Virus record (IMG/VR): IMGVR_UViG_3300023278_002893
Location: 186,001-250,000 of that record
Length of the DNA stretch: 64,000 bases
Reading direction: 5' to 3' (one strand)
Part shown: one piece after another, positions 43,767-64,000 of the stretch
How positions within the stretch are numbered: the first letter of the stretch is position 1
How the letters are laid out: the number at the start of each line of letters is the position of its first letter
The notes under the pieces: model-generated
Database searches by the model: none
Seen by the model: only the letters and a program-made list of their open reading frames with translations
What the model was told of the DNA's origin: nothing
Program-made: the position numbers and the translations under genes

Positions 43767-44371
43767 GCGTAATACTCCTTAGCAACCTCCACCATCTCTC
43801 TCCAGTTATAGACACGGGTGAGTCTGCCTTTGTTGTCCTCAAGTTCGTGAGGATCTGTGGACAGGTGTTGATTCCAAGGTTGATCCCTCATAATAACATC
43901 AATACCTGCATTTACTAAATTTGTTATTTGCCAAACCTCGTCTTCGATCATGACTTGGATTCCAGATAACTTACAGAATTCAGCCTTATCCGAAACGTGG
44001 AATATGTCGTCATAATAAGCGGTGTTTTTATTTAACCACTTGCGGGTATCTTCCATAATAACAGGATGATTTTCACGAGCGGTGACAAAGTAAATCTTTA
44101 TATCCGGCCCAAGTTGTTTTTTAAGATCCCGAGTGAGAAGACTATTATCTTCTTCAAGTGGGGGAATCTTGGCAAACAACCGGTTTTCAATATAAAGAGT
44201 CTTGCGCATATCCTTTGGACGGGTTTCTCTAGTTAATCCGAAGACCTCTTCAATATGATATGCTTCTATTTCATAATCTGGTTCTAACCCGTAGTGTTCT
44301 TTGAGTGCGGGAATTGCACCTGCCATATAGTCCGCCACACAACCATCGCAATCGATTCCAATTTTTTTCAA
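43763..44371 (-). CDS. HAD 5'(3')-deoxyribonucleotidase-like protein
   Basis: IGIDCDGCVAD, FVTAR, K, IED, PWN. Confidence 0.82.
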   Translation of the reverse strand: MKKIGIDCDGCVADYMAGAIPALKEHYGLEPDYEIEAYHIEEVFGLTRETRPKDMRKTLYIENRLFAKIPPLEEDNSLLTRDLKKQLGPDIKIYFVTARENHPVIMEDTRKWLNKNTAYYDDIFHVSDKAEFCKLSGIQVMIEDEVWQITNLVNAGIDVIMRDQPWNQHLSTDPHELEDNKGRLTRVYNWREMVEVAKEYYA

Positions 44372-44385
44372 TTATCCATCCTTAT

Positions 44386-44631
44386 CTAGTAGAAATCTGC
44401 GTCTTCTGGTTCATTCCCATAACCTAGCTCATATGCCTCGTCAATATCCAGATACATATGGGTGGGCCAGAAAGAAATACGTCTTCGGGTTTTGGGATAC
44501 CAGTCCTTACTATACTTACACTTGGGAAACTGATCACACCCCACGAAGAGCGCACCGCTTGCTTTATTTGTTCTTTTTACGGTGGCTCCCTCGTTGCAGT
44601 GGGGACAGCTTTGTCCTGTCTTCTTCATCAC
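44386..44631 (-). CDS. Topoisomerase-type C4 zinc-ribbon protein
   Basis: CPHC...G.LFVGCDQFPKCKY. Confidence 0.8.
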   Translation of the reverse strand: MMKKTGQSCPHCNEGATVKRTNKASGALFVGCDQFPKCKYSKDWYPKTRRRISFWPTHMYLDIDEAYELGYGNEPEDADFY

Positions 44632-44848
44632 TCGGCTCCTCTTCTAATGAACCAAAATAACTTGTAAGCCATTCATTTACGCCGTGAATCTTATCGGGAA
44701 CCACGTCAGTGATTATACGCCATTGCTTATACTCTTTATTGACGTAGGCTATTACCAACTCTTCGTCCCAGATGAAGGAGAGTTTATTCTCGTCTCTCCA
44801 CTCCAGGCTCCTTTCAGCAATAATACGATTTAATTCCCGGGAAGTCAA
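44564..44848 (-). CDS. Hypothetical protein
   Basis: ORF track. Confidence 0.45.
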   Translation of the reverse strand: MTSRELNRIIAERSLEWRDENKLSFIWDEELVIAYVNKEYKQWRIITDVVPDKIHGVNEWLTSYFGSLEEEPSDEEDRTKLSPLQRGSHRKKNK

Positions 44849-45159
44849 TTAATTTGTGCCCACCGAAGAGCAATTTCCCTCTTTTCCACCAAAGAGGTTG
44901 ATGCCTTTATAACATCTCCTACATTGTCGGGAAGCTGGTTATTGATCTTCAGGTACTTTAGTAATGCGTAATCTATTAGAGCATCTATCTCAAGGGCGTC
45001 CGGAGCATCTGGATCACCAGCAATACCACTCATAAGTCGAAGTTTTATGTCCCGGTACTTACTAGATGCGGTAGCCAGCATAAGACCGAAAGAATCCAGA
45101 TCCTTCAATTTGGAACCCTTCGCTTGTAGAAAATATCGAGCCTTAGTAATATCATTCAT
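44845..45159 (-). CDS. Hypothetical protein
   Basis: ORF track; RBS GAGGT. Confidence 0.5.
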   Translation of the reverse strand: MNDITKARYFLQAKGSKLKDLDSFGLMLATASSKYRDIKLRLMSGIAGDPDAPDALEIDALIDYALLKYLKINNQLPDNVGDVIKASTSLVEKREIALRWAQIN

Positions 45160-54365: not shown

Positions 54366-56132
54366 TCAAGGCTGATCTGTGACAACACTGTTAATACCCG
54401 TAGCTGTGGCCCCTGTACCCGCGGCAATATCTATAATACCGGCGTAGTCAGTTCCCACATTTGGAAAATCATCTCCGGGCTTCCAATAGTGTATCAAGCT
54501 CGCACTACTTGTATAAGTCCCAGAATCTGTCGTGAGGTCGTAATCAAAACCTCCCGAAACTAGAGTCGGATACTGCCCCGGCTCTAGCGCTATATCCCAT
54601 ACCCCTATATGTCCTAAACTACCAGACCAAGCCGCTAGCGATGGTGCTGTGTCCTCTAAGAGGTCTCCTACGCGGAGTTGACGTCCACCCGTTGGCTCGT
54701 TCATGTTGCCAGTTCCGGAAAATAATAAGGTTTGGTCCGTGACAAGTAAGCCCTGATCGTATGCGATCAGGTTGGTCCCGTCCCAGACGCATGAGAAATT
54801 CCTCCACTGATTATGCTTCTGGATCTTATTGAAACGCGTTATACGTAATCTACGACCTAGAGAGTTTCCCAATTCTATGACAAGCTCTTCTTCATATTTG
54901 GAGTTTTCTAGTTTGGCCGCCCATATCAATATCTCACTTCTAGGGGTGCTCCCCTTTAGGTGTAATAACGTTCTATGACTATCAATTGCTGCTTGTGGGA
55001 CAAACAGGGTGGGTTTCAACCAAAAACCAAACGTCCATGCATTCCCGATACCTATTTCTTGATTGGGGGAACTTTCTAATCTATCACTAGATCCCCCAAA
55101 TTCTGTGGCTACTGAATTAGTTACCCCTACTCCCCCAGTAGTTAAACTAACCGCCCATTCTTGTGTCGCTGTCCCCGAAAGAGTAGAAGTTACAACAACT
55201 TTGAAATCCTGGCTCGGTTGTTGGCTTACATGTGGTATCCAAGCAACTGACCCTGTTGTGGGGGATATAGTCGCCCCCTCCGGATTAGTTTCGAATGTAT
55301 AAGTCAAAGTCAGGTCTTCGTCGCTTCGTGCATCCACTTCATAGGTGTAAGACTGAGACGTTAGACCTGAAGTAGTTGGTATCCCTGAAATTGTTGGATC
55401 GTGGTCATTGTATTGTACTATTAGGCGGAAACCACCCCCCGCGCGATCTTCTGCATCAAAGAAAACCCGTTCTTCGTCCGACCCGTCCCCGCTACTGCTA
55501 TTATACCAATCCAGGGCAAATGCGATTCCTGAGATTGTCGGGTTTGTACCCCGCCACGCTTCTAAGTTCTCAGCAATGGCATTTGTAGGGGCGGCTGAAA
55601 GTTCAAAGTCTGGTGAATAGTCCGGATCACCGATTGATCCTGAAGTACCCGTCAAGAAGTCACCACTGTCGTAAGTTATTGTACCTAATTCCGCCCCGCC
55701 GAAAACGCGTGATCCGCTAATAGTGTCTGATAACTCACCCGTAGGGAAAGGAAAATCAGTCGAACTTGTATAAGCCCCCCATCCTCCGGAAGTTCCTGAA
55801 AGGGGGACAGTCCAAACACCATCATCTTCGAGCATAAACACACGGAAACTATTATCAGTATCTGTTATAACTGGATTCAGGAAGAACGTGGTCTTCCAAT
55901 TAAGCTTTGCTTTAACATATGACGACCTGTTGGGGATGATTGATAAATCATAATAAAGAAATACCGCATCCGTTGGCTCAAATCCCTTACCTCCAACAGC
56001 CCCTACCCAGAGCTGCTCGGGGGATTCCGGGAGAGGCCAATGCGTCTCTTCATCGACATTGACGCGTACATCCCCCAAAAATCCATGACTATCACTTTCG
56101 GATACTGCGAAACTAGATTCCCGTAATACCAT
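54366..56132 (-). CDS. Probable virion adhesin: DNRLRE-like N-domain, Ig-like domain, LamG domain
   Basis: IP....VKAKLNW, MLEDDGVWT; PTISG.P...YTYEV.A...PEGATI...TG.V.W.P; WTFGFWLKP, WRNFSCVWDG. Confidence 0.7.
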   Translation of the reverse strand: MVLRESSFAVSESDSHGFLGDVRVNVDEETHWPLPESPEQLWVGAVGGKGFEPTDAVFLYYDLSIIPNRSSYVKAKLNWKTTFFLNPVITDTDNSFRVFMLEDDGVWTVPLSGTSGGWGAYTSSTDFPFPTGELSDTISGSRVFGGAELGTITYDSGDFLTGTSGSIGDPDYSPDFELSAAPTNAIAENLEAWRGTNPTISGIAFALDWYNSSSGDGSDEERVFFDAEDRAGGGFRLIVQYNDHDPTISGIPTTSGLTSQSYTYEVDARSDEDLTLTYTFETNPEGATISPTTGSVAWIPHVSQQPSQDFKVVVTSTLSGTATQEWAVSLTTGGVGVTNSVATEFGGSSDRLESSPNQEIGIGNAWTFGFWLKPTLFVPQAAIDSHRTLLHLKGSTPRSEILIWAAKLENSKYEEELVIELGNSLGRRLRITRFNKIQKHNQWRNFSCVWDGTNLIAYDQGLLVTDQTLLFSGTGNMNEPTGGRQLRVGDLLEDTAPSLAAWSGSLGHIGVWDIALEPGQYPTLVSGGFDYDLTTDSGTYTSSASLIHYWKPGDDFPNVGTDYAGIIDIAAGTGATATGINSVVTDQP

Positions 56133-56136
56133 TTAG

Positions 56137-56733
56137 TTAAGGGTTGCGGCGGATAGATACGTGCGTGCCATCTCCTAATTTAGTATGTTGGAAATTTCCA
56201 ACTAGTGGCGTAAGAATGTCAGATACTCTGTCTGAACGCCATTGATGTCCAAACTCCGTAGGAAAATCCCACTGCATAAGTCTGAATATTTTATTTCCGC
56301 CCTTAAATTCTAGATCCGTCTCAAGAAATGCCTTCATTAGGAAAGCAAAGGATCTATTAGCGGTATGTCCTGGTATATTGCGAATACCCGGAGTTATCAT
56401 AGCAGATACTTCCATTAAATTCCCATCATCGGATTCTGTACGTACATTATAAAGATTACATGTACCCAGAAGCACATCTCGTTTATTGTTCTGATCTAAG
56501 GTATAGACTCCAAAATTGACTACACCCAAGTCATCGTCATAAGTAGGGGAATCTCTTCTACAGAGGAAGACGTCAGGTTTATCTGCGAGTTCAATTGCTC
56601 GGAATATAACCCTTCTGAGAATTTTTATCGCCTGATGACGCCGATCTCTAGTCATATCCCTAAAATGAACGAGTCTTATATCCGCGCCGCGGGGATTAGT
56701 AATTGTAAAAGGCTTTATGGCAGGTAATTTCAT
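56137..56733 (-). CDS. Unknown protein, paralog of 26177..26815
   Basis: DGNLMEVSAMITPGIRN versus NGNDIQVSALVTPFLRN. Confidence 0.6.
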   Translation of the reverse strand: MKLPAIKPFTITNPRGADIRLVHFRDMTRDRRHQAIKILRRVIFRAIELADKPDVFLCRRDSPTYDDDLGVVNFGVYTLDQNNKRDVLLGTCNLYNVRTESDDGNLMEVSAMITPGIRNIPGHTANRSFAFLMKAFLETDLEFKGGNKIFRLMQWDFPTEFGHQWRSDRVSDILTPLVGNFQHTKLGDGTHVSIRRNP

Positions 56734-56737
56734 TTTA

Positions 56738-57052
56738 CTAACCTCTAGGGTTCCTCAGTTGATTGAGGTGGTGGATTGCCAATACGTCATCCGCCGCATC
56801 TGCTAAATTCTTTTCATCTAGGGGATCAAGTACTAAACCCAAAAGAGACTCAACCTGACGAGGACCATATTCCTCATTCAGTAGAGCCTCTTCATTTGTT
56901 TCGTCAATGGAGATAGAAGTGTGGTGATGCATTTTATCTCGCCAATCTGCTTCTAGTAAATCCGCATCGTCACACTTTTCAGTTGGCGCAAAAATACTCT
57001 GTTTGCGACGCGTCTTCAGTTCCTCCTGAAATATATCATTGACCTTTGTCAT
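56738..57052 (-). CDS. Hypothetical protein
   Basis: ORF track. Confidence 0.45.
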   Translation of the reverse strand: MTKVNDIFQEELKTRRKQSIFAPTEKCDDADLLEADWRDKMHHHTSISIDETNEEALLNEEYGPRQVESLLGLVLDPLDEKNLADAADDVLAIHHLNQLRNPRG

Positions 57053-57056
57053 TGTT

Positions 57057-57458
57057 TTATGTCCTATTTACCGTTATTCCTAGTGGTATTCTAAGCTCCA
57101 TAACGTTTTCTTGGCTGTACTCCCGCATATTTGGCGAACTAGACTTACTTGACGCTCGCCTCTCAACCGACCGCTGCAATAGCTGTTCCTCTATTTCTTC
57201 AATGGTGAAAGGAAGATCAACAGTCTTGGCTTCTTTAATCAGACCCCACTTAGGTGTGAGTTTCTTTACGACCCAAGCAGTAAATCGTTCTTTTATGGAA
57301 ACCGGTTCTGGCGTAAAGGTCACGTACCACAATTCGTCTTGGATCGCATCCCGCATAATTTTCTTTTCTTCGGCGGGGAGATTTTCTTCTTCACGTTCCC
57401 CCACCTTAGCTACTAGTTGTCTTGGCATTACCTTCTCCTTCCTTAAATATCTGCCCAT
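57057..57458 (-). CDS. Hypothetical protein
   Basis: ORF track; start probably ~57428. Confidence 0.45.
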   Translation of the reverse strand: MGRYLRKEKVMPRQLVAKVGEREEENLPAEEKKIMRDAIQDELWYVTFTPEPVSIKERFTAWVVKKLTPKWGLIKEAKTVDLPFTIEEIEEQLLQRSVERRASSKSSSPNMREYSQENVMELRIPLGITVNRT

Positions 57459-57786
57459 CCGCCATCATCTGACGCAGGGAAGAATAATATCCTACGAATC
57501 TCTGGAAGATCTCATTGTAAGTCTGAGTGAGTTCTTCTTTACTTCCCGTGACGGACAATACTCCTTCATTGGCCTCCTCGGCGGTGATGAGGCCCTTCTC
57601 GGTGAGAAGGTCTAGTGTCTTAAGGCTGACTGACATGTTCTCGGTCAGCAAATATAGGAGAGCATTGAAGTTTGCCTTCAGCTCGTCCTTGTCCATGTCC
57701 CCTCCTAGCAGGGGCACTACTACATCGTCGGGTCTATCCTCTGGTGGGGTTTGGGTCAGATTAAGAGACCCCGTTACGTCAATCAT
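57406..57786 (-). CDS. Hypothetical protein
   Basis: ORF track; downstream of a consensus promoter. Confidence 0.5.
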   Translation of the reverse strand: MIDVTGSLNLTQTPPEDRPDDVVVPLLGGDMDKDELKANFNALLYLLTENMSVSLKTLDLLTEKGLITAEEANEGVLSVTGSKEELTQTYNEIFQRFVGYYSSLRQMMADGQIFKEGEGNAKTTSS

Positions 57787-57891
57787 GGTAATCCTCGTGT
57801 GTTAGCAAAGTGGCAGCTAAATGGTTGATATCGAAAGGTTTAGTGCGATATCCTTAGCAACATACTAACTATATCGCAGTATCCGCAAACA

Positions 57892-57920
57892 ATTATAAGT
57901 TCTGCCGCGCGTAATGTCAA
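57892..57920 (-). promoter_or_regulatory. Consensus sigma70 promoter
   Basis: TTGACA-17-TATAAT. Confidence 0.85.
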
Positions 57921-58107
57921 TGTAACCCCTATAATAGTAGGGTGTGGTAAAACCACTTATATAAGGCTAATAGTGAGGTAATACAGATACTTATACCTCC
58001 AAGCCAATAACCTAGGTTCCAGGATTTCTCACATATATAACACTCCTCTCCGAGCCAATGGATAAGGATCAGCCAGAGCAGAGACACCGCTATGAGCGCC
58101 AGATAAA

Positions 58108-58326
58108 TCAATCTTCTATGTCCTCGTCCAGTTCGTCCGAGGTCACACCGACCAGGAGACGAATGGCCTCGAATAGATTTTTCAAATCGGTGGAAGAAAC
58201 ATATCCCTCCCAGATTTTATACTTGTTCCAGTAAAGACTGGATCTTCCCCTTCTGTCAGTATGTAGTTCGTACATTAACTGCTCCTTAATGGTCCAAGAA
58301 CTTTCATGTTCTGTGCGATCAGCCAC
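58108..58326 (-). CDS. Hypothetical protein
   Basis: ORF track. Confidence 0.4.
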   Translation of the reverse strand: MADRTEHESSWTIKEQLMYELHTDRRGRSSLYWNKYKIWEGYVSSTDLKNLFEAIRLLVGVTSDELDEDIED

Positions 58327-58583
58327 TCCCCGCCTTGGCTGTTCGGTCTCTTGAAACTAACGAAGTCGCGGATCTCAACTTTGTACCACACCCTACCTTT
58401 CGTCGAGAGGTGAGGGGCGCTCGGTTCGCGACCAGCGTGCCAACCGGGACGGTGCGCAAAGCCTTTTGTTGGAATGTCCTCAGCGGGGAGCCACACCCCG
58501 ATCGGGATCCGTTGTCGTGTTCCGATGAACAGAGGCCCGATGGTACCGTCCTTGCGTTGTTTAAACAATTTGTAAGCTTTCAT
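58275..58583 (-). CDS. Phage hypothetical protein (AYKLF...PLFI...GFA.RPGWH)
   Basis: RBS GAGGAG before ATG 58583. Confidence 0.65.
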   Translation of the reverse strand: MKAYKLFKQRKDGTIGPLFIGTRQRIPIGVWLPAEDIPTKGFAHRPGWHAGREPSAPHLSTKGRVWYKVEIRDFVSFKRPNSQGGEWLIAQNMKVLGPLRSS

Positions 58584-58599
58584 CTTTCTCCTCAAACCA

Positions 58600-58628
58600 A
58601 TAATACGAGAAGTGTTCCCCCGTGTCAA
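58600..58628 (-). promoter_or_regulatory. sigma70-type promoter
   Basis: TTGACA-17-TATTAT. Confidence 0.8.
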
Positions 58629-58700
58629 GCACTATCTTCCCCTTTTCACTCGGGGTGGTTTATGATCTATATAGTGGCAAAGAAAGTGATTCCAACGAGA

Positions 58701-58729
58701 ATAATAAGAGAGAATAGAGAGGATGTCAA
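58701..58729 (-). promoter_or_regulatory. sigma70-type promoter
   Basis: TTGACA-17-TATTAT. Confidence 0.8.
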
Positions 58730-58987
58730 ATAAATGACTAGGAGGTCAATATACATCTTCCCCCTTGAGATATAATGGGAGATAATATTGCCTTAGGGAC
58801 CCTAGCATAGTTACCTCACCTTGTGAGGTAATCATTGTTTATACCCCCCTCCTCCGTCGAGGGATATACACATTGATTAACTATGCTACACGCGCTACCA
58901 CTTGTTACCTCACTGCGTGAGCTAATAATTCTCGCTTCGCTCGAATTAGACATGTCGTCTACTTCCAGCAAGCTGAAAGGAGACACC

Positions 58988-59026
58988 ATGTCACGACACG
59001 GAGGTCGCAAGCTCCCTCGTCACTGA
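58988..59026 (+). CDS. 12-aa micropeptide MSRHGGRKLPRH
   Basis: RBS GAAAGGAG 5 nt before ATG. Confidence 0.4.
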   Translation: MSRHGGRKLPRH

Positions 59027-59089
59027 GCTTGTCTAACGCAGCACTCATGCTGCACCGCACGGAGAGCTACGCTCTACCGTGCAGGAGGT

Positions 59090-59284
59090 ATGACTATGTC
59101 ATCCCCCACGCTCGTGCTCCGTGTTCCGACCTGCGACGCTGTCGATTGCATCGACCCCAGCGCAGGGTGCTACCCCGCACTCGATGTCTTCGAAGATATC
59201 GAGCTGTGCGTACATCACGAGAGTGAGTACGCCACTGCGGGTCGCATCAATGAGAGCGATCGACTCGTCGATCACTCTTCCTGA
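59090..59284 (+). CDS. Small Cys/His acidic protein
   Basis: RBS AGGAGGT; followed by a G/C hairpin. Confidence 0.6.
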   Translation: MTMSSPTLVLRVPTCDAVDCIDPSAGCYPALDVFEDIELCVHHESEYATAGRINESDRLVDHSS

Positions 59285-59454
59285 TGCTTGGGGACCCCCC
59301 TCTGGGGGGTCCCTGTGGTTACCTCTCCGAGGTACCCTTCTATCCCTCGCTTCGCTCGGGTACCCCATCACCACGTGGATCTCGCTGCGCGAGCCCTAGT
59401 TGCATCACTTCGTGATACAATCATTTCTCGCTTATCACTCGAAAGGAGTATGAC

Positions 59455-59628
59455 ATGCCCAGTCTCGTCTTCGACTTTGACTGTTCCTGTGAGGTCCTCC
59501 CTTCGGGGGACCTCTGGTGCTGCGATGTGTGCAGCACCGAAGCTGACCCTTGGGGTCAGCTTGCTACCGAAGAATCCGATCGGATTCTCGGACACAACAC
59601 CTTCCTCGATATCTCTCGAAAGGAGTAG
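59455..59628 (+). CDS. 57-aa Cys-rich protein MPSLVFDFDCSCEVLPSGDLWCCDVC... (not in track)
   Basis: RBS GAAAGGAG 6 nt upstream; its 3' end supplies the RBS of the next gene. Confidence 0.6.
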   Translation: MPSLVFDFDCSCEVLPSGDLWCCDVCSTEADPWGQLATEESDRILGHNTFLDISRKE

Positions 59629-59631
59629 ATC

Positions 59632-59754
59632 ATGCTCGAACAATTCGCTATCGCTCTTGTCCCCACCATCGCGTTGCTCTTGGTGGGTCGCTTGATCTGG
59701 ATCACCGATCCAGAGGTCAAGCGACTGCGCAAAGCTGAGCAGAAGCTCAGCTAG
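59632..59754 (+). CDS. 40-aa single-TM protein MLEQFAIALVPTIALLLVGRLIWIT... (not in track)
   Basis: RBS GAAAGGAG; hydrophobic helix and basic tail. Confidence 0.6.
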   Translation: MLEQFAIALVPTIALLLVGRLIWITDPEVKRLRKAEQKLS

Positions 59755-59760
59755 CGCATC

Positions 59761-59789
59761 GGACCCCCCTAACGGGGGGTCCTCTTTTT
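59761..59789 (+). terminator. Intrinsic terminator-like hairpin
   Basis: GGACCCCCC-TAAC-GGGGGGTCC followed by TCTTTTT. Confidence 0.7.
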
Positions 59790-59954
59790 ACAGCACCGAC
59801 CCGCTTCGCTAAGTCGGTCTTGTTCATTTACTCGTGAGTACCCCCTTCGGGGGTACCAACGAGCACCGCTCGTTCCTCGCTCTCGTCGTTCCTCCTCACT
59901 AGTTGCATCACTTTGTGATACAATCATTTCTCGCTATCGCTCGAAAGGAGATCC

Positions 59955-60185
59955 ATGTTTATCATTCTTCTCGATTCCTCGAAGAACGAACTCCGCGTCG
60001 TCCGTGCTGACTCTGTCAGCGACTCCGGGACGCGGGTCGTTGTGGTTCCTCACCACAACGGTCACTCGTACGACTTCGAACTCCCTCCGGGAGTCGAAGC
60101 CTTCGCAGACCTCGCTACCTTCGACGATGTCGAAGCTGCGTGGTCGTCGGTTCGCACCGACTTCTGCCCCTCGCTCCACCCCTAG
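59955..60185 (+). CDS. Small hypothetical protein
   Basis: RBS GAAAGGAG after a repeat module. Confidence 0.65.
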   Translation: MFIILLDSSKNELRVVRADSVSDSGTRVVVVPHHNGHSYDFELPPGVEAFADLATFDDVEAAWSSVRTDFCPSLHP

Positions 60186-60304
60186 CGGGGTGGGGTGTCC
60201 CCCTTCGGGGGTAGTTACCTCACTCTGTGAGGTAATACTTCTCTGGGTACTAGCGTACCCTTTGAAGTATTATCTTTCTCGTTAATCTCTCGAAAGGAGA
60301 CTCT

Positions 60305-60784
60305 ATGCGTTGCTCGTTCTGTAACGATCCCCGTGGGATCATCATGGTTGATGGTATCCCCGAGCCCTGCTGTGATGAGATCATCACGCAGCAAGTCCGC
60401 GAAGTACGCGGCATCTGTGTCAATTGTGGGGAATCCCACACTCGCATGAACGAGGGTGTAGACACCCTCTCCGCCATGTGCTCCGATGAGTGCCTCACCG
60501 AAGCCATGGATCGCATCGAAGCAATCGCGCTGCGCGACGATTGTGGCGGTGAGATGCCCGACCAGGAGGTCATGGACCTCCATGACTCCGTCGATCGTAT
60601 CGACGCAGCCAACCTCGCGTGGTACCGCCACGCGGGTCAGTACATCGACAACGGTGTCGATGACTGTCTCGGTACTCCTCCCTTCTGGTTGGAGTACTCG
60701 ATAGAGCGCGACGCTCTGGAGAGCGATGCACGCATCGCTAAGCTCCAGAACGACGAGCACAAGTACGGGTGTATCCCGTTCTAG
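60305..60784 (+). CDS. Acidic Cys-rich (zinc-binding) hypothetical protein
   Basis: CSFC..CC..CVNC..CSDEC; RBS GAAAGGAG. Confidence 0.7.
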   Translation: MRCSFCNDPRGIIMVDGIPEPCCDEIITQQVREVRGICVNCGESHTRMNEGVDTLSAMCSDECLTEAMDRIEAIALRDDCGGEMPDQEVMDLHDSVDRIDAANLAWYRHAGQYIDNGVDDCLGTPPFWLEYSIERDALESDARIAKLQNDEHKYGCIPF

Positions 60785-60869
60785 TGCTCTGGTCCCCCTA
60801 GCGGGGGACCTACCGCTCCGCTCTCGCTTCGCTCACTAGTTCCTCCACTTCGTGAAGGAGGTCACTCAC

Positions 60870-60944
60870 ATGACCAAGTTGATCCTGTGCACCTACGCTC
60901 CGCTGCTCTACTTGCTTGCGGAATTCGCTTCACTCATCCCTTAA
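60870..60944 (+). CDS. 24-aa hydrophobic peptide MTKLILCTYAPLLYLLAEFASLIP
   Basis: RBS AAGGAGGT. Confidence 0.5.
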   Translation: MTKLILCTYAPLLYLLAEFASLIP

Positions 60945-60962
60945 CCAAGAAGGAGCTACGCT

Positions 60963-61016
60963 ATGGATGATCTCGACCGCGACATCCAGGACGTCATTGA
61001 CGACCTGTGCGAATAG
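60963..61016 (+). CDS. 17-aa acidic peptide MDDLDRDIQDVIDDLCE
   Basis: RBS AAGGAG 7 nt upstream. Confidence 0.45.
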   Translation: MDDLDRDIQDVIDDLCE

Positions 61017-61524
61017 ACCCATGTGGGTAGGAGTGCGTTACCGCGCACTCCTGCCCACCCGCTTCGCTCGCTACGCTCGCTCGCTCCTCTAAGAGCAAGG
61101 GAGGACTCTGTTGAGTCCTACTCCAGTACCGCTCGTCCCTCGCTCTCGCTTCGCTCACTCCCCTTCGGGGATAGTCCCATCACTTCGTGATCGGTAGTAC
61201 ATTTTTTTCGCTCATCGCTCAAAAAGGAGTCCTCCATTGGATGGATGACACCCCACAGCTACCTGCCCGAGCACGGCTTGGTAGCACCACGGGGGCCGTA
61301 GTGCTCCCTCCGCTGCGAGACGCAGTACAAGCAGTGACCTGCTTGTGGCGGAGGTTGATCAGCTCGCTTCGCTCGCTAACGGATGCTCCGCATCCTTAGA
61401 GACCCGGAGCGTCCCCCCTACGGGGGGTAGTTTCACCGCTGCGCGATGAAGTATCGGTTCTTGCGAACCTCGTTGTTAGACCACAGTGGTCTGATGCAGG
61501 GTTCGCTTGATAGGAGGACATGAC

Positions 61525-61881
61525 ATGTCCAATGCAGTAAAGACCACGATCAAGAAGTTTTCGTTCACGAAGTGGATCAGTGAGATCGAAGGTTCGGGTG
61601 CTCGCGTACTCGGATTCTGTGAGATGACGGTCTGCGTCGATGGTCTGGAGTTCACGTTCAGTGACCTGAAGGTTCGCGTGAATCAGAAGGGTGAGCATCA
61701 CCTGTGCGCACCGAGTCGTCGCTACAAGAACTCCGAAGGTGCCTGGAGGACGTCGAGCGCGTACAAGTTCGACAATTCGACGTATGCTGCTCTGCGCAGT
61801 TTCGTCTACGGTCGCGACGAAGTGAAGGTCGCGATCGACGAAGCCGCGGATCTCGAAAAGGAGATTCCGCTGAGCGCGTAG
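61525..61881 (+). CDS. SpoVG-like nucleic-acid-binding protein
   Basis: GFCEMTV...FTFSDLKV....GEHHLCAPSRRYK..EG.W matches the SpoVG pattern; RBS AGGAGG. Confidence 0.7.
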   Translation: MSNAVKTTIKKFSFTKWISEIEGSGARVLGFCEMTVCVDGLEFTFSDLKVRVNQKGEHHLCAPSRRYKNSEGAWRTSSAYKFDNSTYAALRSFVYGRDEVKVAIDEAADLEKEIPLSA

Positions 61882-62104
61882 TACATAGCAGTACCTCTAA
61901 GTAGGGGTACTGCTAGTCCCACCCCACCGCTTCCCGGGGGGTGGGACCTCGCTCTCTTTCTGCTATCACGCGTGCTCATTGAGAAATGAAGGACTCTGAT
62001 GAGTCCTCCTTTATTGACGTTCGCTTCGCTCTCTCTCAGTTCCTCCGCTTCGCTCCCCCCTTCGCTATAGTCTCCGCATTCTCTGGATGCGGTTACTATT
62101 ATAA

Positions 62105-62134
62105 GAGACCCTCTAACGAGGAGTCTCTTTTTTT
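62105..62134 (+). terminator. Intrinsic terminator-like hairpin
   Basis: GAGACCCTC-TAAC-GAGGAGTCTC followed by a T7 run. Confidence 0.65.
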
Positions 62135-62497
62135 ATTGACGCGCGCTGTTGCTCGGTGGATTCGTTCGGTACTGTTCATTCGGTGGTTGATTCGTTTACT
62201 CTCATTTGTTAGGGCACCACCCCAGTAGACGAAACTAATTACGGAGATATCAATTCCTTACGGAAACGCTGATTTACTCGTCGTCGCTGTGCTCCTCGTT
62301 GTTCCTTCTTTTTTTGATCTTTCATCTCGGTGCACCATTCGTAGAGATATCTATGGATGCACGCCCGTCGGATACGTAAGTACTTGCAATACTCCGACAG
62401 TGCTTTATCGATACGTCTAGGTAGTTCCTAGCGGACGAGATGGGAGATCTTTTTTCGCGGCCGCTCAAAAAAGCCTATTACAAGGAGATTAGAAACA

Positions 62498-62628
62498 TGG
62501 AACACATCCTCAAGAAGATGGCTGTACCCAACATCTTGCACTGCGCAGAACTAGTGGTTCTGACCATCGTCGTGCATTTGGCCTCAGGATTGGTATTCTT
62601 ACCATTATTCATCCCGAGGCAAGAATAA
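62498..62628 (+). CDS. Small membrane peptide MEHILKKMAV... (start approximate)
   Basis: RBS AAGGAG; hydrophobic C-half. Confidence 0.45.
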
Positions 62629-63516
62629 ACCCAACCCCGAAGAAGATAGGAGATCAAACCCATGTTCTACACAATACTACTAATGGTACTGAAAGAATAC
62701 AAGGACAGCAACAATCCATTCACCTGAGAGACCCCTCAGTTGAGTTAGACCACCCAGGAGGGATGGGACACTGGTAGGTGGTGGTCAGCTTTTACCAGGC
62801 GGTGACATCATTTTGCTCGGCGGACAAATCAATAGTAATTTCAAATAGATAGAGTAAATATGTAGGGCTCTGACGTTACTACAGTAGGGGGTTTCGCGCG
62901 TCCCTGTCCAGGTGACTCATTCATTAGGAGATCGATCTCTGGGTGAAACCCTTCTGTATTGCTTCTTACGAATTATTCACTATACTCAGAATTTTCACCC
63001 GCCGGATAAAACACCCAATATCACCCTGTACTCAAACTGAATAAGGCTAGAACCCCCCTAGACAAGAAGAACTCCAGTAGTGCCCTCTGTTAGAGCCAAT
63101 TGTATTACTGCTTTAGCAGATTCATTGCAAGCATGGTGATGATTTACCTGTTGTACTCCCAGTATGCCTCTGTATCGATCCATGCTCATCGATCGATGTA
63201 GTTGATTTCATTGAGGAATTTAGTGTAGTGAAATGGTAAATGCCAATAGGTCGATCAAGTGGGTGTGATCGAGTACCCCGTATTAGTTGAATAGGTCGGT
63301 CTGTGTTGGTGCTTTGGCACCCCATGAGGGGTCTAGGTTGTTCCTTCATTTTGATGTTCTGTGCTCCCATGTGCTTGGTTTCGTTGATGATTGGAGCCGG
63401 GGGTGGAGTGTGAGGGGAACGTGTAGGAGAAGCGAAGTGTGAGCGTCTCAGGTACCACCTGTGAGAGCTAGTGAGTACAGAGGAGAGTTAATCCATTACC
63501 GGTTTCTACCGGGAAC

Positions 63517-63834
63517 ATGCCTATTAGAGGCGGGAGAACTATTATGTTGGAGAAGAGACAGCCGAGAGGAAAGACAATAAGATGCTGGAGCAGGAACGGT
63601 GAGCCCCTCGATCCCGGTGCAGAACTCCACATGGAGCTGTTAAAACTAGAACACGTGTACTGGCGCAATGAGCTGACAGCGTGCGACGATTGCGGCACAG
63701 CTATACCCAATCGCGATCTTCGACTTACTCCATATGGATTGGTATGTGAGGATTGCAGAGAGACCGTCAAGAAGACAAGAATCAACTTGGGTAGGTTTCT
63801 ACGTAAATGGGAACCTAGCGGAGAGGCATGCTAG
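63517..63834 (+). CDS. Zinc-ribbon hypothetical protein
   Basis: CDDCG...CEDC. Confidence 0.55.
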   Translation: MPIRGGRTIMLEKRQPRGKTIRCWSRNGEPLDPGAELHMELLKLEHVYWRNELTACDDCGTAIPNRDLRLTPYGLVCEDCRETVKKTRINLGRFLRKWEPSGEAC

Positions 63835-64000
63835 ACTGTTTTATCCGCCGCTGAAAAATGCCAATAACCCTGGGAGGGGAAAGGAGAGAATCATGGACAG
63901 AACACTACTGGAAGCATCTGGACTGGCCTGTCATCGTAGTACCTGTGAGGAGCAGGCTCAATGGGAAGGCTACGCTGACACCTACAGGCCTATTACAGGA

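What the first reader, a model, noticed from the sequence alone, without database searches (positions are those of the whole stretch)
58988..61016. Micro-gene cluster (12-159 aa) with strong, similar RBSs, five genes missed by the ORF track
Seen: 12-, 64-, 57-, 40-, 76-, 159-, 24- and 17-aa ORFs, each behind GAAAGGAG, AAGGAG or AGGAGG. They include two hydrophobic peptides, several Cys-rich proteins and one very acidic peptide (MDDLDRDIQDVIDDLCE). Established: such cassettes typify host-takeover and anti-defence regions (SPO1, T5 pre-early). Inference: candidate inhibitors of host defence or transcription; the repeated modules could also allow recombinational gene shuffling.
Basis: partly seen in the sequence, partly recalled or inferred. 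Interest (0 to 1): 0.6.

Follow-up and report, generated by a model that had tools for sequence, protein, structure and literature searches.

The report
Shuffled mini-gene cassettes, jumbo phage
At the head of one transcription arm of an uncultivated 298-kb phage lies a 2.7-kb array of tiny genes, each with its own copy of a conserved hairpin-bearing control module and its own terminator hairpin. Most of the genes are real, being conserved in related phages, and the repeated modules are where relatives have swapped, lost and fused them.

Summary
All eight ORFs exist, each 4-9 nt behind AAGGAG or AGGAGG (11 such motifs on the + strand against 1 on the - strand in 2.4 kb). Six are supported as genes by relatives in metagenomes: the 62-, 57-, 76- and 159-aa ORFs firmly (dN/dS 0.08-0.48), the 40-aa ORF moderately, the 24-aa ORF weakly. 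The 12-aa ORF is a deletion scar. The 17-aa acidic peptide has no support.

The larger finding is the architecture. There are seven or eight autonomous mini transcription units. Each starts with a conserved module: a CT-rich tract, a TAGTYG box, a 5-9-bp hairpin with a 3-nt loop, then a leader with GAAAGGAG. Each ends in a GC-rich hairpin. The hairpin shows compensatory changes. A covariance model finds 10 copies in the 298-kb genome, all on the + strand, 8 of them here.

Relatives carry the same modules with different gene orders, cassette insertions/deletions at module borders, and domain swaps.

The closest known systems are T4-type PeSL cassettes (for architecture and evolution) and phage N4 hairpin early promoters (for the element). 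The phage also encodes a tape-measure-fused RNA-polymerase-like protein plus a free paralogue, as in Thermus phage P23-45.

A host-takeover function is plausible but untested.

The parts
58811..58831 (+). Module hairpin P1 (TTACCTCAC-ctt-GTGAGGTAA), preceded by TAGT and followed by GTTTATACCCCC. It is the first element of the rightward arm. Orthologous copies in L021 (2770) and L017 (348) have compensatory stem changes.
   Evidence: (44.4 bits, E 8e-13)
58905..58925 (+). Module hairpin P2, in tandem with P1. Its leader (58927-58990) is 89% identical to the leader of the 145-aa gene of L027.
58988..59026 (+). 12-aa ORF (MSRHGGRKLPRH). It is a deletion scar. The RBS and ATG come from a 145-aa-type cassette gene. 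From 58993 onward the sequence is homologous to the leader of the next cassette (L027 1360-1420, 82.5%).
59096..59284 (+). 62-aa acidic protein with 4 Cys and 3 His. Conserved: P0011 on L027, 54-55% identity, dN/dS 0.48.
59290..59314 (+). Terminator-like GC hairpin T1 (GGGGACCCCCC-tct-GGGGGGTCCCC). The folded segment 59285-59345 has an energy of -33.9 kcal/mol.
59400..59420 (+). Module hairpin P3 (TTGCATCAC-ttc-GTGATACAA), 45 nt (loop centre 59410) upstream of the ATG of the 57-aa ORF.
59455..59628 (+). 57-aa acidic protein with 5 Cys (CxC...CCxxC). Conserved: 58% identity over 48 aa with a longer ORF on L027 (from 2734), dN/dS 0.08. Its last codons run through a module-derived leader that supplies the RBS of the next ORF.
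   Evidence: (D2, D15)
59632..59754 (+). 40-aa membrane-type peptide. It is homologous to the N-terminal transmembrane segment of the 78-aa protein of L021 (52% over 27 aa; dN/dS 0.55).
59761..59856 (+). Two terminator-like hairpins: T2 (59761-59782, followed by TCTTTTT) and T2b (59838-59856, CCCCC-ttc-GGGGG core).
59903..59923 (+). Module hairpin P4, 97% identical to P3 over the 37-nt repeat 59899-59935. It lies 42 nt (loop centre 59913) upstream of the ATG of the 76-aa ORF.
59955..60185 (+). 76-aa acidic protein. Conserved: P0010, also 76 aa, 58% identity, seen in 6 metagenome contigs. dN/dS 0.32; differences by codon position 20, 17 and 35.
60172..60211 (+). Two terminator-like hairpins T3 (CCACCCC-tagc-GGGGTGG and CCCCC-ttc-GGGGG). 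The folded segment has an energy of -30 kcal/mol.
60215..60235 (+). Module hairpin P5 (9-bp stem, loop tct), 80 nt (loop centre 60225) upstream of the ATG of the 159-aa ORF.
60305..60784 (+). 159-aa acidic protein with 11 Cys. The full-length homologue P0002 is 40% identical. It is a mosaic: residues 1-41 match the 62-aa gene of L021/L019 (50-52%); residues 38-72 match the Zn-ribbon-like C-termini of the 78-aa (L021) and 74-aa (L027) genes; the C-terminal half matches the 145-aa gene of L027.
60791..60811 (+). Terminator-like hairpin T4 (GGTCCCCC-tagc-GGGGGACC).
60840..60860 (+). Module hairpin P6. It is imperfect: a C.A mismatch on the + strand becomes a T.G wobble on the template strand. Its 3' arm overlaps the AGGAGG before the 24-aa ORF.
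   Evidence: (31.8 bits)
60870..60944 (+). 24-aa hydrophobic peptide. It shows weak, syntenic similarity to a 29-aa ORF of L027 (shared C-terminal ...E[FL]AS[LQ]IP; BLAST E 0.42 only).
60963..61016 (+). 17-aa acidic ORF (MDDLDRDIQDVIDDLCE). It has an RBS, but no counterpart was found in any relative. Status open.
61023..61058 (+). Terminator-like hairpin T5 (15-bp arms), followed by a second hairpin at 61102-61120.
   Evidence: (I16)
61175..61195 (+). Module hairpin P7. The 52-aa ORF that follows (61241-61399) lacks coding-type composition and has no homologue. This unit looks like an empty or decayed cassette.
61431..61451 (+). Degenerate module hairpin P8. The covariance model found it although it was not in the training set.
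   Evidence: (E 4.7e-5)
61525..61881 (+). 118-aa conserved anchor gene that closes the array. It has a SpoVG-like fold, and its family members are 54-62% identical in relatives.
   Evidence: pLDDT 79.7; top 7 PDB hits all SpoVG

Best explanation
The locus is a hyperplastic array of seven or eight autonomous mini transcription units. It lies at the start of the rightward (+ strand) arm of an uncultivated, roughly 298-kb long-tailed phage.

Each unit starts with a composite regulatory module. In order, the module holds the GC-rich stem-loop that ends the previous unit, a CT-rich tract (CGCTYCGCTC-like), a TAGTYG box, a 5-9-bp hairpin with a 3-nt loop, and a CT-rich leader ending in CTCGAAAGGAG 4-9 nt before the ATG.

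Shown:
- The modules are repeated, strand-specific and concentrated here.
- The hairpin is kept by compensatory changes.
- At least four, and probably six, of the ORFs are protein-coding genes under purifying selection in relatives.
- Relatives differ by cassette gain and loss, re-ordering, gene fusion and fission, and domain swaps whose ends fall in the modules.

Inferred:
- The hairpin element is a phage-specific promoter, read as a structure extruded on the template strand, as in phage N4. It is not a sigma-70 promoter.
- The enzyme is most likely one of the phage's two two-barrel RNA polymerases: the copy fused to the tape-measure protein, presumably delivered with the DNA, or its free paralogue.
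- The GC hairpins end each transcript.
- The small acidic, Cys-rich (zinc-ribbon-like) and membrane proteins are early accessory factors that act on host processes.
- The repeated modules give the homology that lets cassettes be exchanged, as PeSLs do in T4-type phages.
For: Architecture:
- The repeat families and their order appear.
- Template-strand DNA hairpins fold at -3.8 to -7.7 kcal/mol.
- GC hairpins follow every unit; the folded segments run from -17.6 to -55.9 kcal/mol.

Structure is selected (24 elements from this genome and four relatives):
- 86.6% of cells are paired, against 75.1% in shuffles (0 of 500 shuffles reach the observed value) and 33-56% when partners are slid.
- 6 of 9 pairs carry changes on both sides.
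- The inner CTCAC/GTGAG stem is nearly invariant and the outer pairs covary.

Specificity:
- Covariance model R1 finds 10 hits at E<1e-4 in the 298-kb genome. All are on the + strand and 8 lie in 58795-61467.
- The other two lie 80 nt (loop centre) upstream of a SpoVG-like paralogue and 100 nt (loop centre) upstream of an SSB gene.
- In L027, which was not used for training, 5 hits each precede a cassette ORF.

Not sigma-70:
- The TTGCAT-to-TACAAT spacing is 10 nt.
- Relatives have no -10-like hexamer after the hairpin.
- True TTGACA-17-TATAAT promoters are abundant on the other arm: 17 on the - strand against about 2 expected.

Template-strand reading:
- Loops are pyrimidine-only on the coding strand in 23 of 24 elements. 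On the template strand this gives GAA 12, AAA 4, AAG 3, AGA 3, GGA 1, GCA 1.
- Stem mismatches are C.A on the coding strand (a T.G wobble on the template strand) 5-6 times, against 1 the other way.
- The template hairpin is more stable in 6 of 8 elements.
- N4 promoters have the same features: a 3-nt loop, a 5-7-bp stem, template purines at -11 and -10, and conserved plus merely-paired stem positions (PMC4496689).

Polymerases:
- A 1054-aa ORF carries both the beta and the beta' double-psi barrel signatures.
- The 4554-aa tape-measure protein matches that ORF over 436 aa (E 9e-13) and shares the motif MNLDFDGD.
- This pairing of genes is what Thermus phage P23-45 uses for pre-early and early transcription (PMC10770324).

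Coding:
- Homologues and dN/dS: 76 aa, 0.32; 62 aa, 0.48; 57 aa, 0.08; N-terminus of the 159-aa ORF, 0.26; 40 aa, 0.55.
- GC3>GC1>GC2 in seven of the eight ORFs (the 17-aa ORF has GC1>GC3>GC2), and in all eight the claimed frame scores better than the other two same-strand frames.

Shuffling:
- L019 has a roughly 280-bp cassette that is absent from the 97%-identical L021, bounded by repeated modules.
- The junction of the 12-aa scar maps to the ATG.
- Gene order differs in the window, L021 and L027.
Against: - No transcript data exist: no sequencing run was listed. Promoter activity, start sites, terminator function and timing are therefore all inferred.
[quoted passage not shown] The word 'hairpin' does not occur in that paper's main text.
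- Neither polymerase here shows sequence-level similarity to the P23-45 enzymes.
- No N4-type or T7-type polymerase is detectable, so the only enzyme class known to read hairpin promoters is absent.
- The strand asymmetry of mismatches (6 to 1) is not statistically decisive.
- Two elements (P3, P4) contain a good extended -10 (TGATACAAT), which host polymerase could use.
- Most GC hairpins lack a U-tract.
- The cluster is internal in the contig, not at an end as P23-45 pre-early genes are.
- No function is established for any micro-protein. The AlphaFold model of the 159-aa protein failed (pLDDT 41).
Confidence: 0.6

Rival explanations
1. The hairpins act in the RNA, not the DNA. The real promoter lies upstream, for example in the CT-rich tract and TAGTYG box or only at the head of the arm. 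The stem-loop then sits at or near the 5' end of each mRNA as a stabiliser or processing site, like the 5' stem-loop of T7 phi10 transcripts. The GC hairpins would be 3' stabilisers or processing signals in a polycistronic transcript.
For: - The hairpin always lies between a terminator-like hairpin and the RBS, on the coding strand side.
- Several units have ...CTCAC-TAGT... just upstream, which recalls the CTCACTA core of single-subunit polymerase promoters (my own recollection, alignment).
- The GC hairpins have RNA-type tetraloops (UUCG), and most lack U-tracts.
- Covariation fits an RNA helix as well as a DNA helix.
Against: - Mismatches are mostly C.A on the RNA-sense strand, which breaks an RNA helix but is a wobble on the template strand.
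- The coding-strand hairpin is weaker in 6 of 8 elements.
- Sequence upstream of TAGT is not conserved between units.
- No T7-like polymerase is detectable.
- Loops are never purine-rich on the sense strand, which argues for strand-specific recognition of the loop.
Confidence: 0.22
2. Host RNA polymerase, with host sigma-70 or the phage's own sigma-70-family protein, reads these units. The inverted repeat is then a double-stranded operator for a dimeric phage regulator that overlaps the promoter.
For: - P3 and P4 carry TG-n-TACAAT, a good extended -10.
- P2 gives a 9/12 sigma-70 match (TTGTTA-16-AATAAT).
- The phage encodes a sigma factor with regions 2 and 4.
- T4 PeSLs use sigma-70-like early promoters (PMC2839356).
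Against: - Relatives keep the hairpin and the TAGTYG box but have no -10-like hexamer after it (GGGAACCC, GGTGAAAC, GTCAACC).
- Copies within one genome differ in the outer stem by compensatory pairs. That fits base pairing, not one protein reading identical half-sites.
- The loop bias is strand-specific.
- The genome's clear sigma-70 consensus promoters look quite different.
Confidence: 0.1
3. The small ORFs are chance frames in a structured non-coding region, such as an origin, a packaging site or a repeat array. The RBS-like motifs are only part of the repeats.
For: - Hairpin density is unusually high, even inside ORFs.
- The RBS belongs to the repeat.
- The AGGAGG before the 24-aa ORF is a hairpin arm.
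- The 12-aa ORF is a scar.
- The 52-aa ORF and the 17-aa ORF have no support.
Against: - Four ORFs have homologues at 40-58% identity with dN/dS of 0.08-0.48 and an excess of third-position changes. Lengths and Cys patterns are preserved.
- The exhaustive search found a 60-aa homologue of the 62-aa ORF.
- The frame-specific GC pattern holds.
Confidence: 0.04

Closest known systems
PeSL (promoter-early stem-loop) cassettes of T4-type phages (Arbiol et al. 2010, PMC2839356; Comeau et al. 2014, PMC4122927)
   Same: - Small composite terminator-plus-promoter modules are repeated many times in a hyperplastic region full of small ORFan genes.
- Closely related phages differ by insertions, deletions and replacements whose ends fall in the modules. 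Here that means the L019/L021 cassette insertion/deletion, the 12-aa scar and the re-ordered genes.
   Different: - PeSLs carry strong sigma-70-like promoters. This promoter-side element is a conserved hairpin with a TAGTYG box and no conserved -10 or -35.
- The module here also includes a conserved leader and RBS.
- The phage is unrelated to T4.
- Mini-circles, a PeSL hallmark, could not be tested.
Hairpin early promoters of coliphage N4, read by the virion RNA polymerase (PMC4496689)
   Same: - A 3-nt loop on a 5-9-bp stem.
- Purine-rich loop on the template strand (GAA or GGA in 13 of 24 elements, which matches N4's G-R-A).
- A conserved inner stem, with outer positions that only need to pair.
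- A handful of copies upstream of the first genes of an arm.
- An SSB link: N4 needs host SSB, and here one element precedes the phage SSB gene.
   Different: - No N4-type (phrog_2206) or T7-type (PF00940) polymerase is detectable. The candidate enzymes are two-barrel polymerases.
- The flanking sequence differs.
- There are 10 copies rather than 3.
- Activity is untested.
Thermus phage P23-45 transcription scheme: tape-measure-fused virion RNAP gp96 plus non-virion RNAP gp64 (Chaban et al. 2024, PMC10770324)
   Same: - A giant tape-measure protein (4554 aa here, 5002 aa there) whose N-terminal part resembles a two-barrel RNAP with the DFDGD motif.
- A free paralogue elsewhere in the genome.
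- Consensus host-type promoters on the structural arm.
- Clusters of short units with dedicated promoter and terminator motifs.
   Different: - No BLAST- or HMM-level similarity to the P23-45 proteins.
- The genome is 3.6 times larger.
[quoted passage not shown]
- P23-45 pre-early genes lie at a genome end, whereas this cluster is internal in the contig.
Also 'morons', meaning autonomous promoter-gene-terminator units in phage genomes.
   Same: - Dense runs of very small genes with strong, similar RBSs and several promoters and terminators.
- Located at the head of an early arm.
   Different: - Those use host sigma-A or sigma-70 promoters.
- No homology to any of their proteins.
- The function here is untested.

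Membership tests
T4-type PeSL regulatory cassettes | Repeated composite motif of a terminator stem-loop plus a promoter, located between small genes | tested here: met
   GC hairpin plus promoter-side module recurs 7-8 times in 2.7 kb.
T4-type PeSL regulatory cassettes | The promoter part is a strong sigma-70-like early promoter | tested here: not met
   No conserved -35/-10 pair. The spacing is wrong (10 nt), and relatives lack any -10.
T4-type PeSL regulatory cassettes | Insertions, deletions and replacements between close relatives have their ends in the motifs | tested here: met
   Insertion/deletion of a roughly 280-bp cassette between L019 and L021; further 430-bp insertion/deletion; 12-aa scar junction.
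T4-type PeSL regulatory cassettes | Mini-circles formed by recombination between motifs, and membership of the T4-like phages | not testable with these tools
   No reads were available. The phage shows no detectable relation to T4-type phages.
N4-type hairpin promoter system | Inverted repeat giving a 5-7-bp stem and a 3-nt loop, with purines in the template-strand loop | tested here: met
   Stems of 5-9 bp. Template-strand loops are GAA, AAA, AAG, AGA or GGA in 23 of 24 elements. Covariation is present.
N4-type hairpin promoter system | Giant virion RNA polymerase of the T7-like single-subunit class | tested here: not met
   phrog_2206 and PF00940 find nothing in the genome. For PF00940 the control genomes did not match either, so that negative result is weak.
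N4-type hairpin promoter system | Transcription starts a fixed distance downstream of the hairpin and depends on supercoiling and SSB | not testable with these tools
   No RNA data.
P23-45-type dual two-barrel RNAP scheme | Two-barrel RNAP domain at the N-terminus of the tape-measure protein | tested here: inconclusive
   P0013 residues 546-957 match the phage's own RNAP (E 9e-13), and MNLDFDGD is shared. The TMP domain lies at residues 2438-2973. However, Pfam and PDB searches see no RNAP there, and no fold model could be made.
P23-45-type dual two-barrel RNAP scheme | A separate non-virion two-barrel RNAP | tested here: met
   A 1054-aa ORF carries PF00562 and PF00623 in one chain and matches bacterial beta subunits in the PDB.
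P23-45-type dual two-barrel RNAP scheme | Sequence homology to gp96 and gp64, and their AT-rich and GC-rich promoter motifs | tested here: not met
   No tblastn or PDB sequence hit to the P23-45 proteins. The element here is a hairpin.
SpoVG (for the 118-aa anchor gene) | SpoVG fold | tested here: met
   Model pLDDT 79.7. The top 7 PDB matches are all SpoVG (probability 0.96-1.0, TM 0.44-0.68).
SpoVG (for the 118-aa anchor gene) | Match to the Pfam SpoVG profile | tested here: not met
   No Pfam hit at E<=1. The resemblance is in fold only.

The most novel reading that the evidence does not exclude
The conserved stem-loop is a structured promoter, extruded on the template strand, for a two-barrel RNA polymerase. 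The likely enzyme is the copy fused to the tape-measure protein and delivered with the DNA. That would make it a second, independent invention of N4-style hairpin promoters by an unrelated polymerase class. It would also extend the P23-45 'tail-tape-fused polymerase' strategy from 80-kb Thermus phages to a 298-kb jumbo phage lineage from sediments. In this reading the same modules double as recombination handles for shuffling early micro-genes.
Probability: 0.25. Interest if true: 0.85.

Novelty: new variant of a known kind. Interest (0 to 1): 0.62.

Why it matters
It gives a compact, testable example of how a large uncultivated phage organises and renews its first-expressed genes. About ten copies of one well-defined element (a covariance model is in hand) mark a small regulon: the micro-genes, two SpoVG-like genes and the SSB gene.

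If a phage two-barrel polymerase reads the element, it would be the first hairpin-type promoter outside the N4 and T7-like polymerase class. It would also be a ready-made orthogonal promoter-terminator set.

The cassette comparison shows gene birth, fusion, fission and loss among proteins of 12-159 aa, which annotation pipelines usually miss. It also singles out four conserved acidic, Cys-rich micro-proteins as candidates for screens of host interference.

Tried and rejected
- Pfam and PHROG scans of all micro-ORFs: nothing significant.
- Rfam scan of 56000-64000: nothing.
- blastn of the region, and tblastn of the tail-fibre-like protein, the RNAP and the N-terminus of the TMP, against 50,697 phage records: no hit for the region, the RNAP or the TMP N-terminus; only short 7-15% matches of the tail-fibre-like ORF to tail-fibre genes.
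- IMG/VR scans returned only the same phage: a 196-kb contig that is 100% identical, so it gives no variation to analyse.
- The GTDB genome scan found nothing. The metagenome scan gave one locus.
- Sequencing-run search: none was listed, so read laying was not used and no expression evidence exists.
- AlphaFold of the 159-aa protein failed (pLDDT 41), so no fold search was run on it.
- The ESM Atlas gave only sub-threshold zinc-ribbon leads.
- PDB profile searches for the 159-aa and 118-aa families: nothing significant.
- The codon-usage log-odds score did not separate the sense frame from the in-phase antisense frame, so I relied on homologues and dN/dS.
- One early script used 58989 instead of 58988 for the 12-aa ORF. 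Its row should be ignored.
- One hairpin (L015:60) was left out of the alignment because MAFFT put it one column out of register.
- Rejected: a tandem-repeat or CRISPR-like array (units differ in length and content), a sigma-70 reading of TTGCAT-N10-TACAAT (wrong spacing), and an N4-like polymerase.

Full report
CONTEXT

The window is bases 186001-250000 of a single 297,725-bp IMG/VR virus record, rated linear and 100% complete by CheckV. Nothing similar exists among 50,697 deposited phage genomes.

Genes from about 51.5 kb to 244.7 kb of the genome lie on the minus strand, at GC about 0.45. This block includes a 4554-aa tape-measure protein. From window position about 58,700 onward, genes lie on the plus strand and GC rises to 0.52-0.57. 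The finding therefore sits exactly at the divergence point, at the head of the rightward arm.

Three near-perfect TTGACA-17-TATAAT/TATTAT promoters point leftward from this point. Such consensus promoters are enriched on the minus arm: 17, against about 2 expected.

OBSERVATION

All eight ORFs are present, each 4-9 nt behind AAGGAG or AGGAGG. The strand bias of these motifs (11 against 1 in 2.4 kb) and the local excess of hairpins are far beyond chance. The 10-kb bin has 21 hairpins with a 6-bp or longer stem and a 3-nt loop, against about 3 elsewhere. Eight of the genome's 22 C4+/G4+ hairpins also lie here.

The RBSs look alike because they belong to a repeated module of about 60-70 nt (families D1-D6). 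The module runs: CT-rich tract (CGCTYCGCTC), TAGTYG, a hairpin with core CTCAC-YYY-GTGAG, then a CT-rich leader ending in CTCGAAAGGAG. Each unit ends in one or two very stable GC hairpins.

The layout is:
- P1, P2, then the 12-aa and 62-aa ORFs, then T1.
- P3, then the 57-aa and 40-aa ORFs, then T2.
- P4, then the 76-aa ORF, then T3.
- P5, then the 159-aa ORF, then T4.
- P6, then the 24-aa and 17-aa ORFs, then T5.
- P7, then a 52-aa ORF that does not look coding, then T6.
- P8 (degenerate), then a conserved 118-aa gene.

ARE THE ORFs GENES?

No family library recognises them. Relatives do exist in marine-sediment and other metagenomes.

- 159-aa ORF. It has a 153-aa homologue at 40% identity with all the N-terminal Cys conserved.
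- 76-aa ORF. It has a 76-aa homologue at 58% identity on six contigs. dN/dS is 0.32, and differences by codon position are 20, 17 and 35.
- 62-aa ORF. An exhaustive HMMER search of 1.84 billion proteins found a 60-aa homologue (55% identity, E 2.9e-10). dN/dS is 0.48. The homologue supports the second ATG (59096) as the start.
- 57-aa ORF. It matches an ORF on the same contig (L027) at 58% over 48 aa, including CSCE...WCCDVCST. dN/dS is 0.08.
- 40-aa peptide. It is homologous to the N-terminal transmembrane segment of a 78-aa protein in L021 (52% over 27 aa).
- 24-aa peptide. It has only a weak, syntenic resemblance to a 29-aa ORF in L027.
- 17-aa acidic peptide. It has no counterpart.
- 12-aa ORF. 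It is a scar. Window 58927-58990 is 89% identical to the leader, RBS and ATG of a 145-aa gene in L027. Window 58993-59055 is 82.5% identical to the leader of the next cassette there. A deletion therefore joined an ATG directly to the next gene's leader.

THE HAIRPIN ELEMENT

I aligned 24 copies without gaps, taken from this genome and from L015, L017, L019 and L021. On that alignment:
- 86.6% of cells pair, against 75.1% in shuffles (0 of 500 shuffles reach it) and 33-56% when partners are slid by 1-3 columns.
- Six of nine pairs carry changes on both sides. For example, CAC/GTG changes to CGC/GCG or to CAT/ATG in the orthologous first element of three phages.
- The inner five pairs are nearly invariant.

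A covariance model built from this alignment finds ten copies in the whole genome, all on the + strand. Eight lie in the cluster, including one copy not used for training. One lies 80 nt (loop centre) upstream of a SpoVG-like paralogue. One lies 100 nt (loop centre) upstream of an SSB gene (PF00436, E 4e-12). In L027, which was not used for training, five hits each precede a cassette ORF.

The loop is pyrimidine-only on the coding strand in 23 of 24 copies. On the template strand that reads GAA, AAA, AAG, AGA or GGA. Stem mismatches are mostly C.A on the coding strand, which is a T.G wobble on the template strand. The template-strand DNA hairpin is the more stable one in 6 of 8 copies.

These features match what is described for N4 early promoters (PMC4496689): a 3-nt loop, a 5-7-bp stem, template purines at -11 and -10, and conserved plus merely-paired stem positions. 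The elements are not sigma-70 promoters, because the spacing is wrong and relatives have no -10 hexamer.

WHICH POLYMERASE?

The genome has no detectable N4-type or T7-type polymerase. It does encode three relevant proteins:
- A 1054-aa protein with both the beta-type and beta'-type barrel signatures in one chain.
- A sigma-70-family protein.
- The 4554-aa tape-measure protein, whose residues 546-957 match the 1054-aa polymerase (E 9e-13) and which shares the catalytic-type motif MNLDFDGD at residues 1400-1407.

A tape-measure-fused virion polymerase plus a free paralogue is exactly the gene set shown to drive pre-early and early transcription in Thermus phage P23-45, with host polymerase reading late genes (PMC10770324). 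Sequence-level homology to the P23-45 proteins was not found. That paper describes AT-rich and GC-rich promoter motifs, and the word 'hairpin' does not occur in its main text. I therefore take the scheme as a working analogy, not as membership of that family.

SHUFFLING

L019 and L021 are 97% identical over the 62-aa gene. L019 then has an extra cassette of about 280 bp (a 65-aa gene) bounded by repeated terminator/promoter modules, and the gene that follows is a different paralogue. A further 430-bp insertion/deletion lies downstream.

Gene order differs in all three better-sampled relatives:
- Window: 62, 57, 40, 76, 159, 24 aa.
- L027: 145 aa, 62-like, 75 aa, TM+Zn, 24-like, 57-like.
- L021: 76 aa, 40-like+Zn, 159-N-like, then a SpoVG-like gene.

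Domains also move:
- The 159-aa protein combines an N-terminal piece that is a separate 62-aa gene in L021/L019, a CxxCG..H..N..D..SA.C.D.C piece that is the C-terminus of transmembrane proteins in L021 and L027, and a C-terminal piece found in the 145-aa gene of L027.
- In L027 the 57-aa homologue reads through a decayed module leader (CTCGGAACAAC in place of CTCGAAAGGAG) into further coding sequence.

This is the behaviour described for PeSL cassettes of T4-type phages (PMC2839356, PMC4122927). The difference is that the promoter-side element there is sigma-70-like.

FUNCTION

The four well-supported proteins are acidic (pI 4.1-4.7). Three of them are Cys-rich with CxxC-type spacing. Atlas look-alikes point weakly to zinc ribbons.

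The anchor gene has a SpoVG-like fold, and the regulon includes an SSB gene. Together with the position at the head of an arm, this fits an early accessory or host-interaction role. No test of that role was possible, and the AlphaFold model of the 159-aa protein was unusable.

VERDICT

- The locus is a new variant of known kinds, namely PeSL-like cassette arrays and hairpin early promoters, in a previously undescribed jumbo-phage lineage with a P23-45-like polymerase set.
- No alternative genetic code was needed.

Noticed in passing
genome 160365-174029 (minus strand; L001:365-14029; protein P0013), outside the window: This 4554-aa tape-measure protein has its TMP domain at residues 2438-2973. 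Its residues 546-957 match the phage's own two-barrel RNA polymerase (E 9e-13), and it shares MNLDFDGD at residues 1400-1407. It is a candidate tail-tape-fused virion polymerase like gp96 of Thermus phage P23-45, but in a 298-kb genome and with no sequence-level similarity to gp96.
   Followed up: partly
genome 26734-29898 (+; L008:6734-9898) and 44073-44909 (+; L009:4073-4909): Two transcription genes lie on this arm. One is a single-chain 1054-aa RNA polymerase carrying both PF00562 and PF00623 signatures. The other is a 278-aa sigma-70-family protein with regions 2 and 4. A CCA-adding/poly(A) polymerase-like gene lies next to it (genome 44945-46426).
   Followed up: partly
window 61525-61881; paralogue at genome 252759-253328 (L004:2759-3328): The 118-aa gene that closes the array has a SpoVG-like fold: the top 7 PDB matches are all SpoVG. 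It belongs to a family with several paralogues per phage, and these are also preceded by the hairpin element. No Pfam SpoVG hit.
   Followed up: yes
genome 273268-273923 (L005:3268-3923): One of only two hairpin elements outside the cluster lies 100 nt (loop centre) upstream of an SSB gene (PF00436, E 4e-12). This is worth noting because N4 hairpin promoters depend on SSB.
   Followed up: partly
window 57892-57920, 58600-58628, 58701-58729 (minus strand); genome-wide: Three near-perfect sigma-70 promoters (TTGACA-17-TATAAT/TATTAT) point leftward from the divergence point. Genome-wide there are 17 such sites on the minus strand and 8 on the plus strand, against about 2 expected per strand.
   Followed up: partly
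window 61241-61399: A 52-aa ORF sits behind a module (P7) and an AAAGGAG. It lacks coding-type composition (GC1/2/3 = 0.70/0.62/0.60), has no homologue, and runs over a CGCTTCGCTC tract. It is probably an emptied cassette.
   Followed up: partly
window 62322-62471, matching L017:1172-1310: A non-coding stretch is conserved at 80-82% identity. It contains TTTTCGCGGCCGCTCAAAAA and lies inside a largely ORF-free interval of about 1.5 kb (61,950-63,540) downstream of the anchor gene. Its role is unknown.
   Followed up: no
genome 122564-130459 and 130845-137471 (minus strand; L002, L003): Two further giant ORFs (2631 aa and 2208 aa) have no Pfam, PHROG or PDB sequence match at all.
   Followed up: partly
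L015:4883-5524 and L021:11050-11862: Related phage contigs carry a GGDEF-domain (diguanylate-cyclase-type) gene a few kb downstream of their cassette arrays.
   Followed up: no
IMGVR_UViG_3300023278_003531 (196,567 bp) compared with the 297,725-bp record: A second IMG/VR contig is 100% identical over at least 9.7 kb. By its offset it ends about 60 bp from the end of the larger record, which hints at a real genome end or at a repeat that stops assembly there.
   Followed up: no
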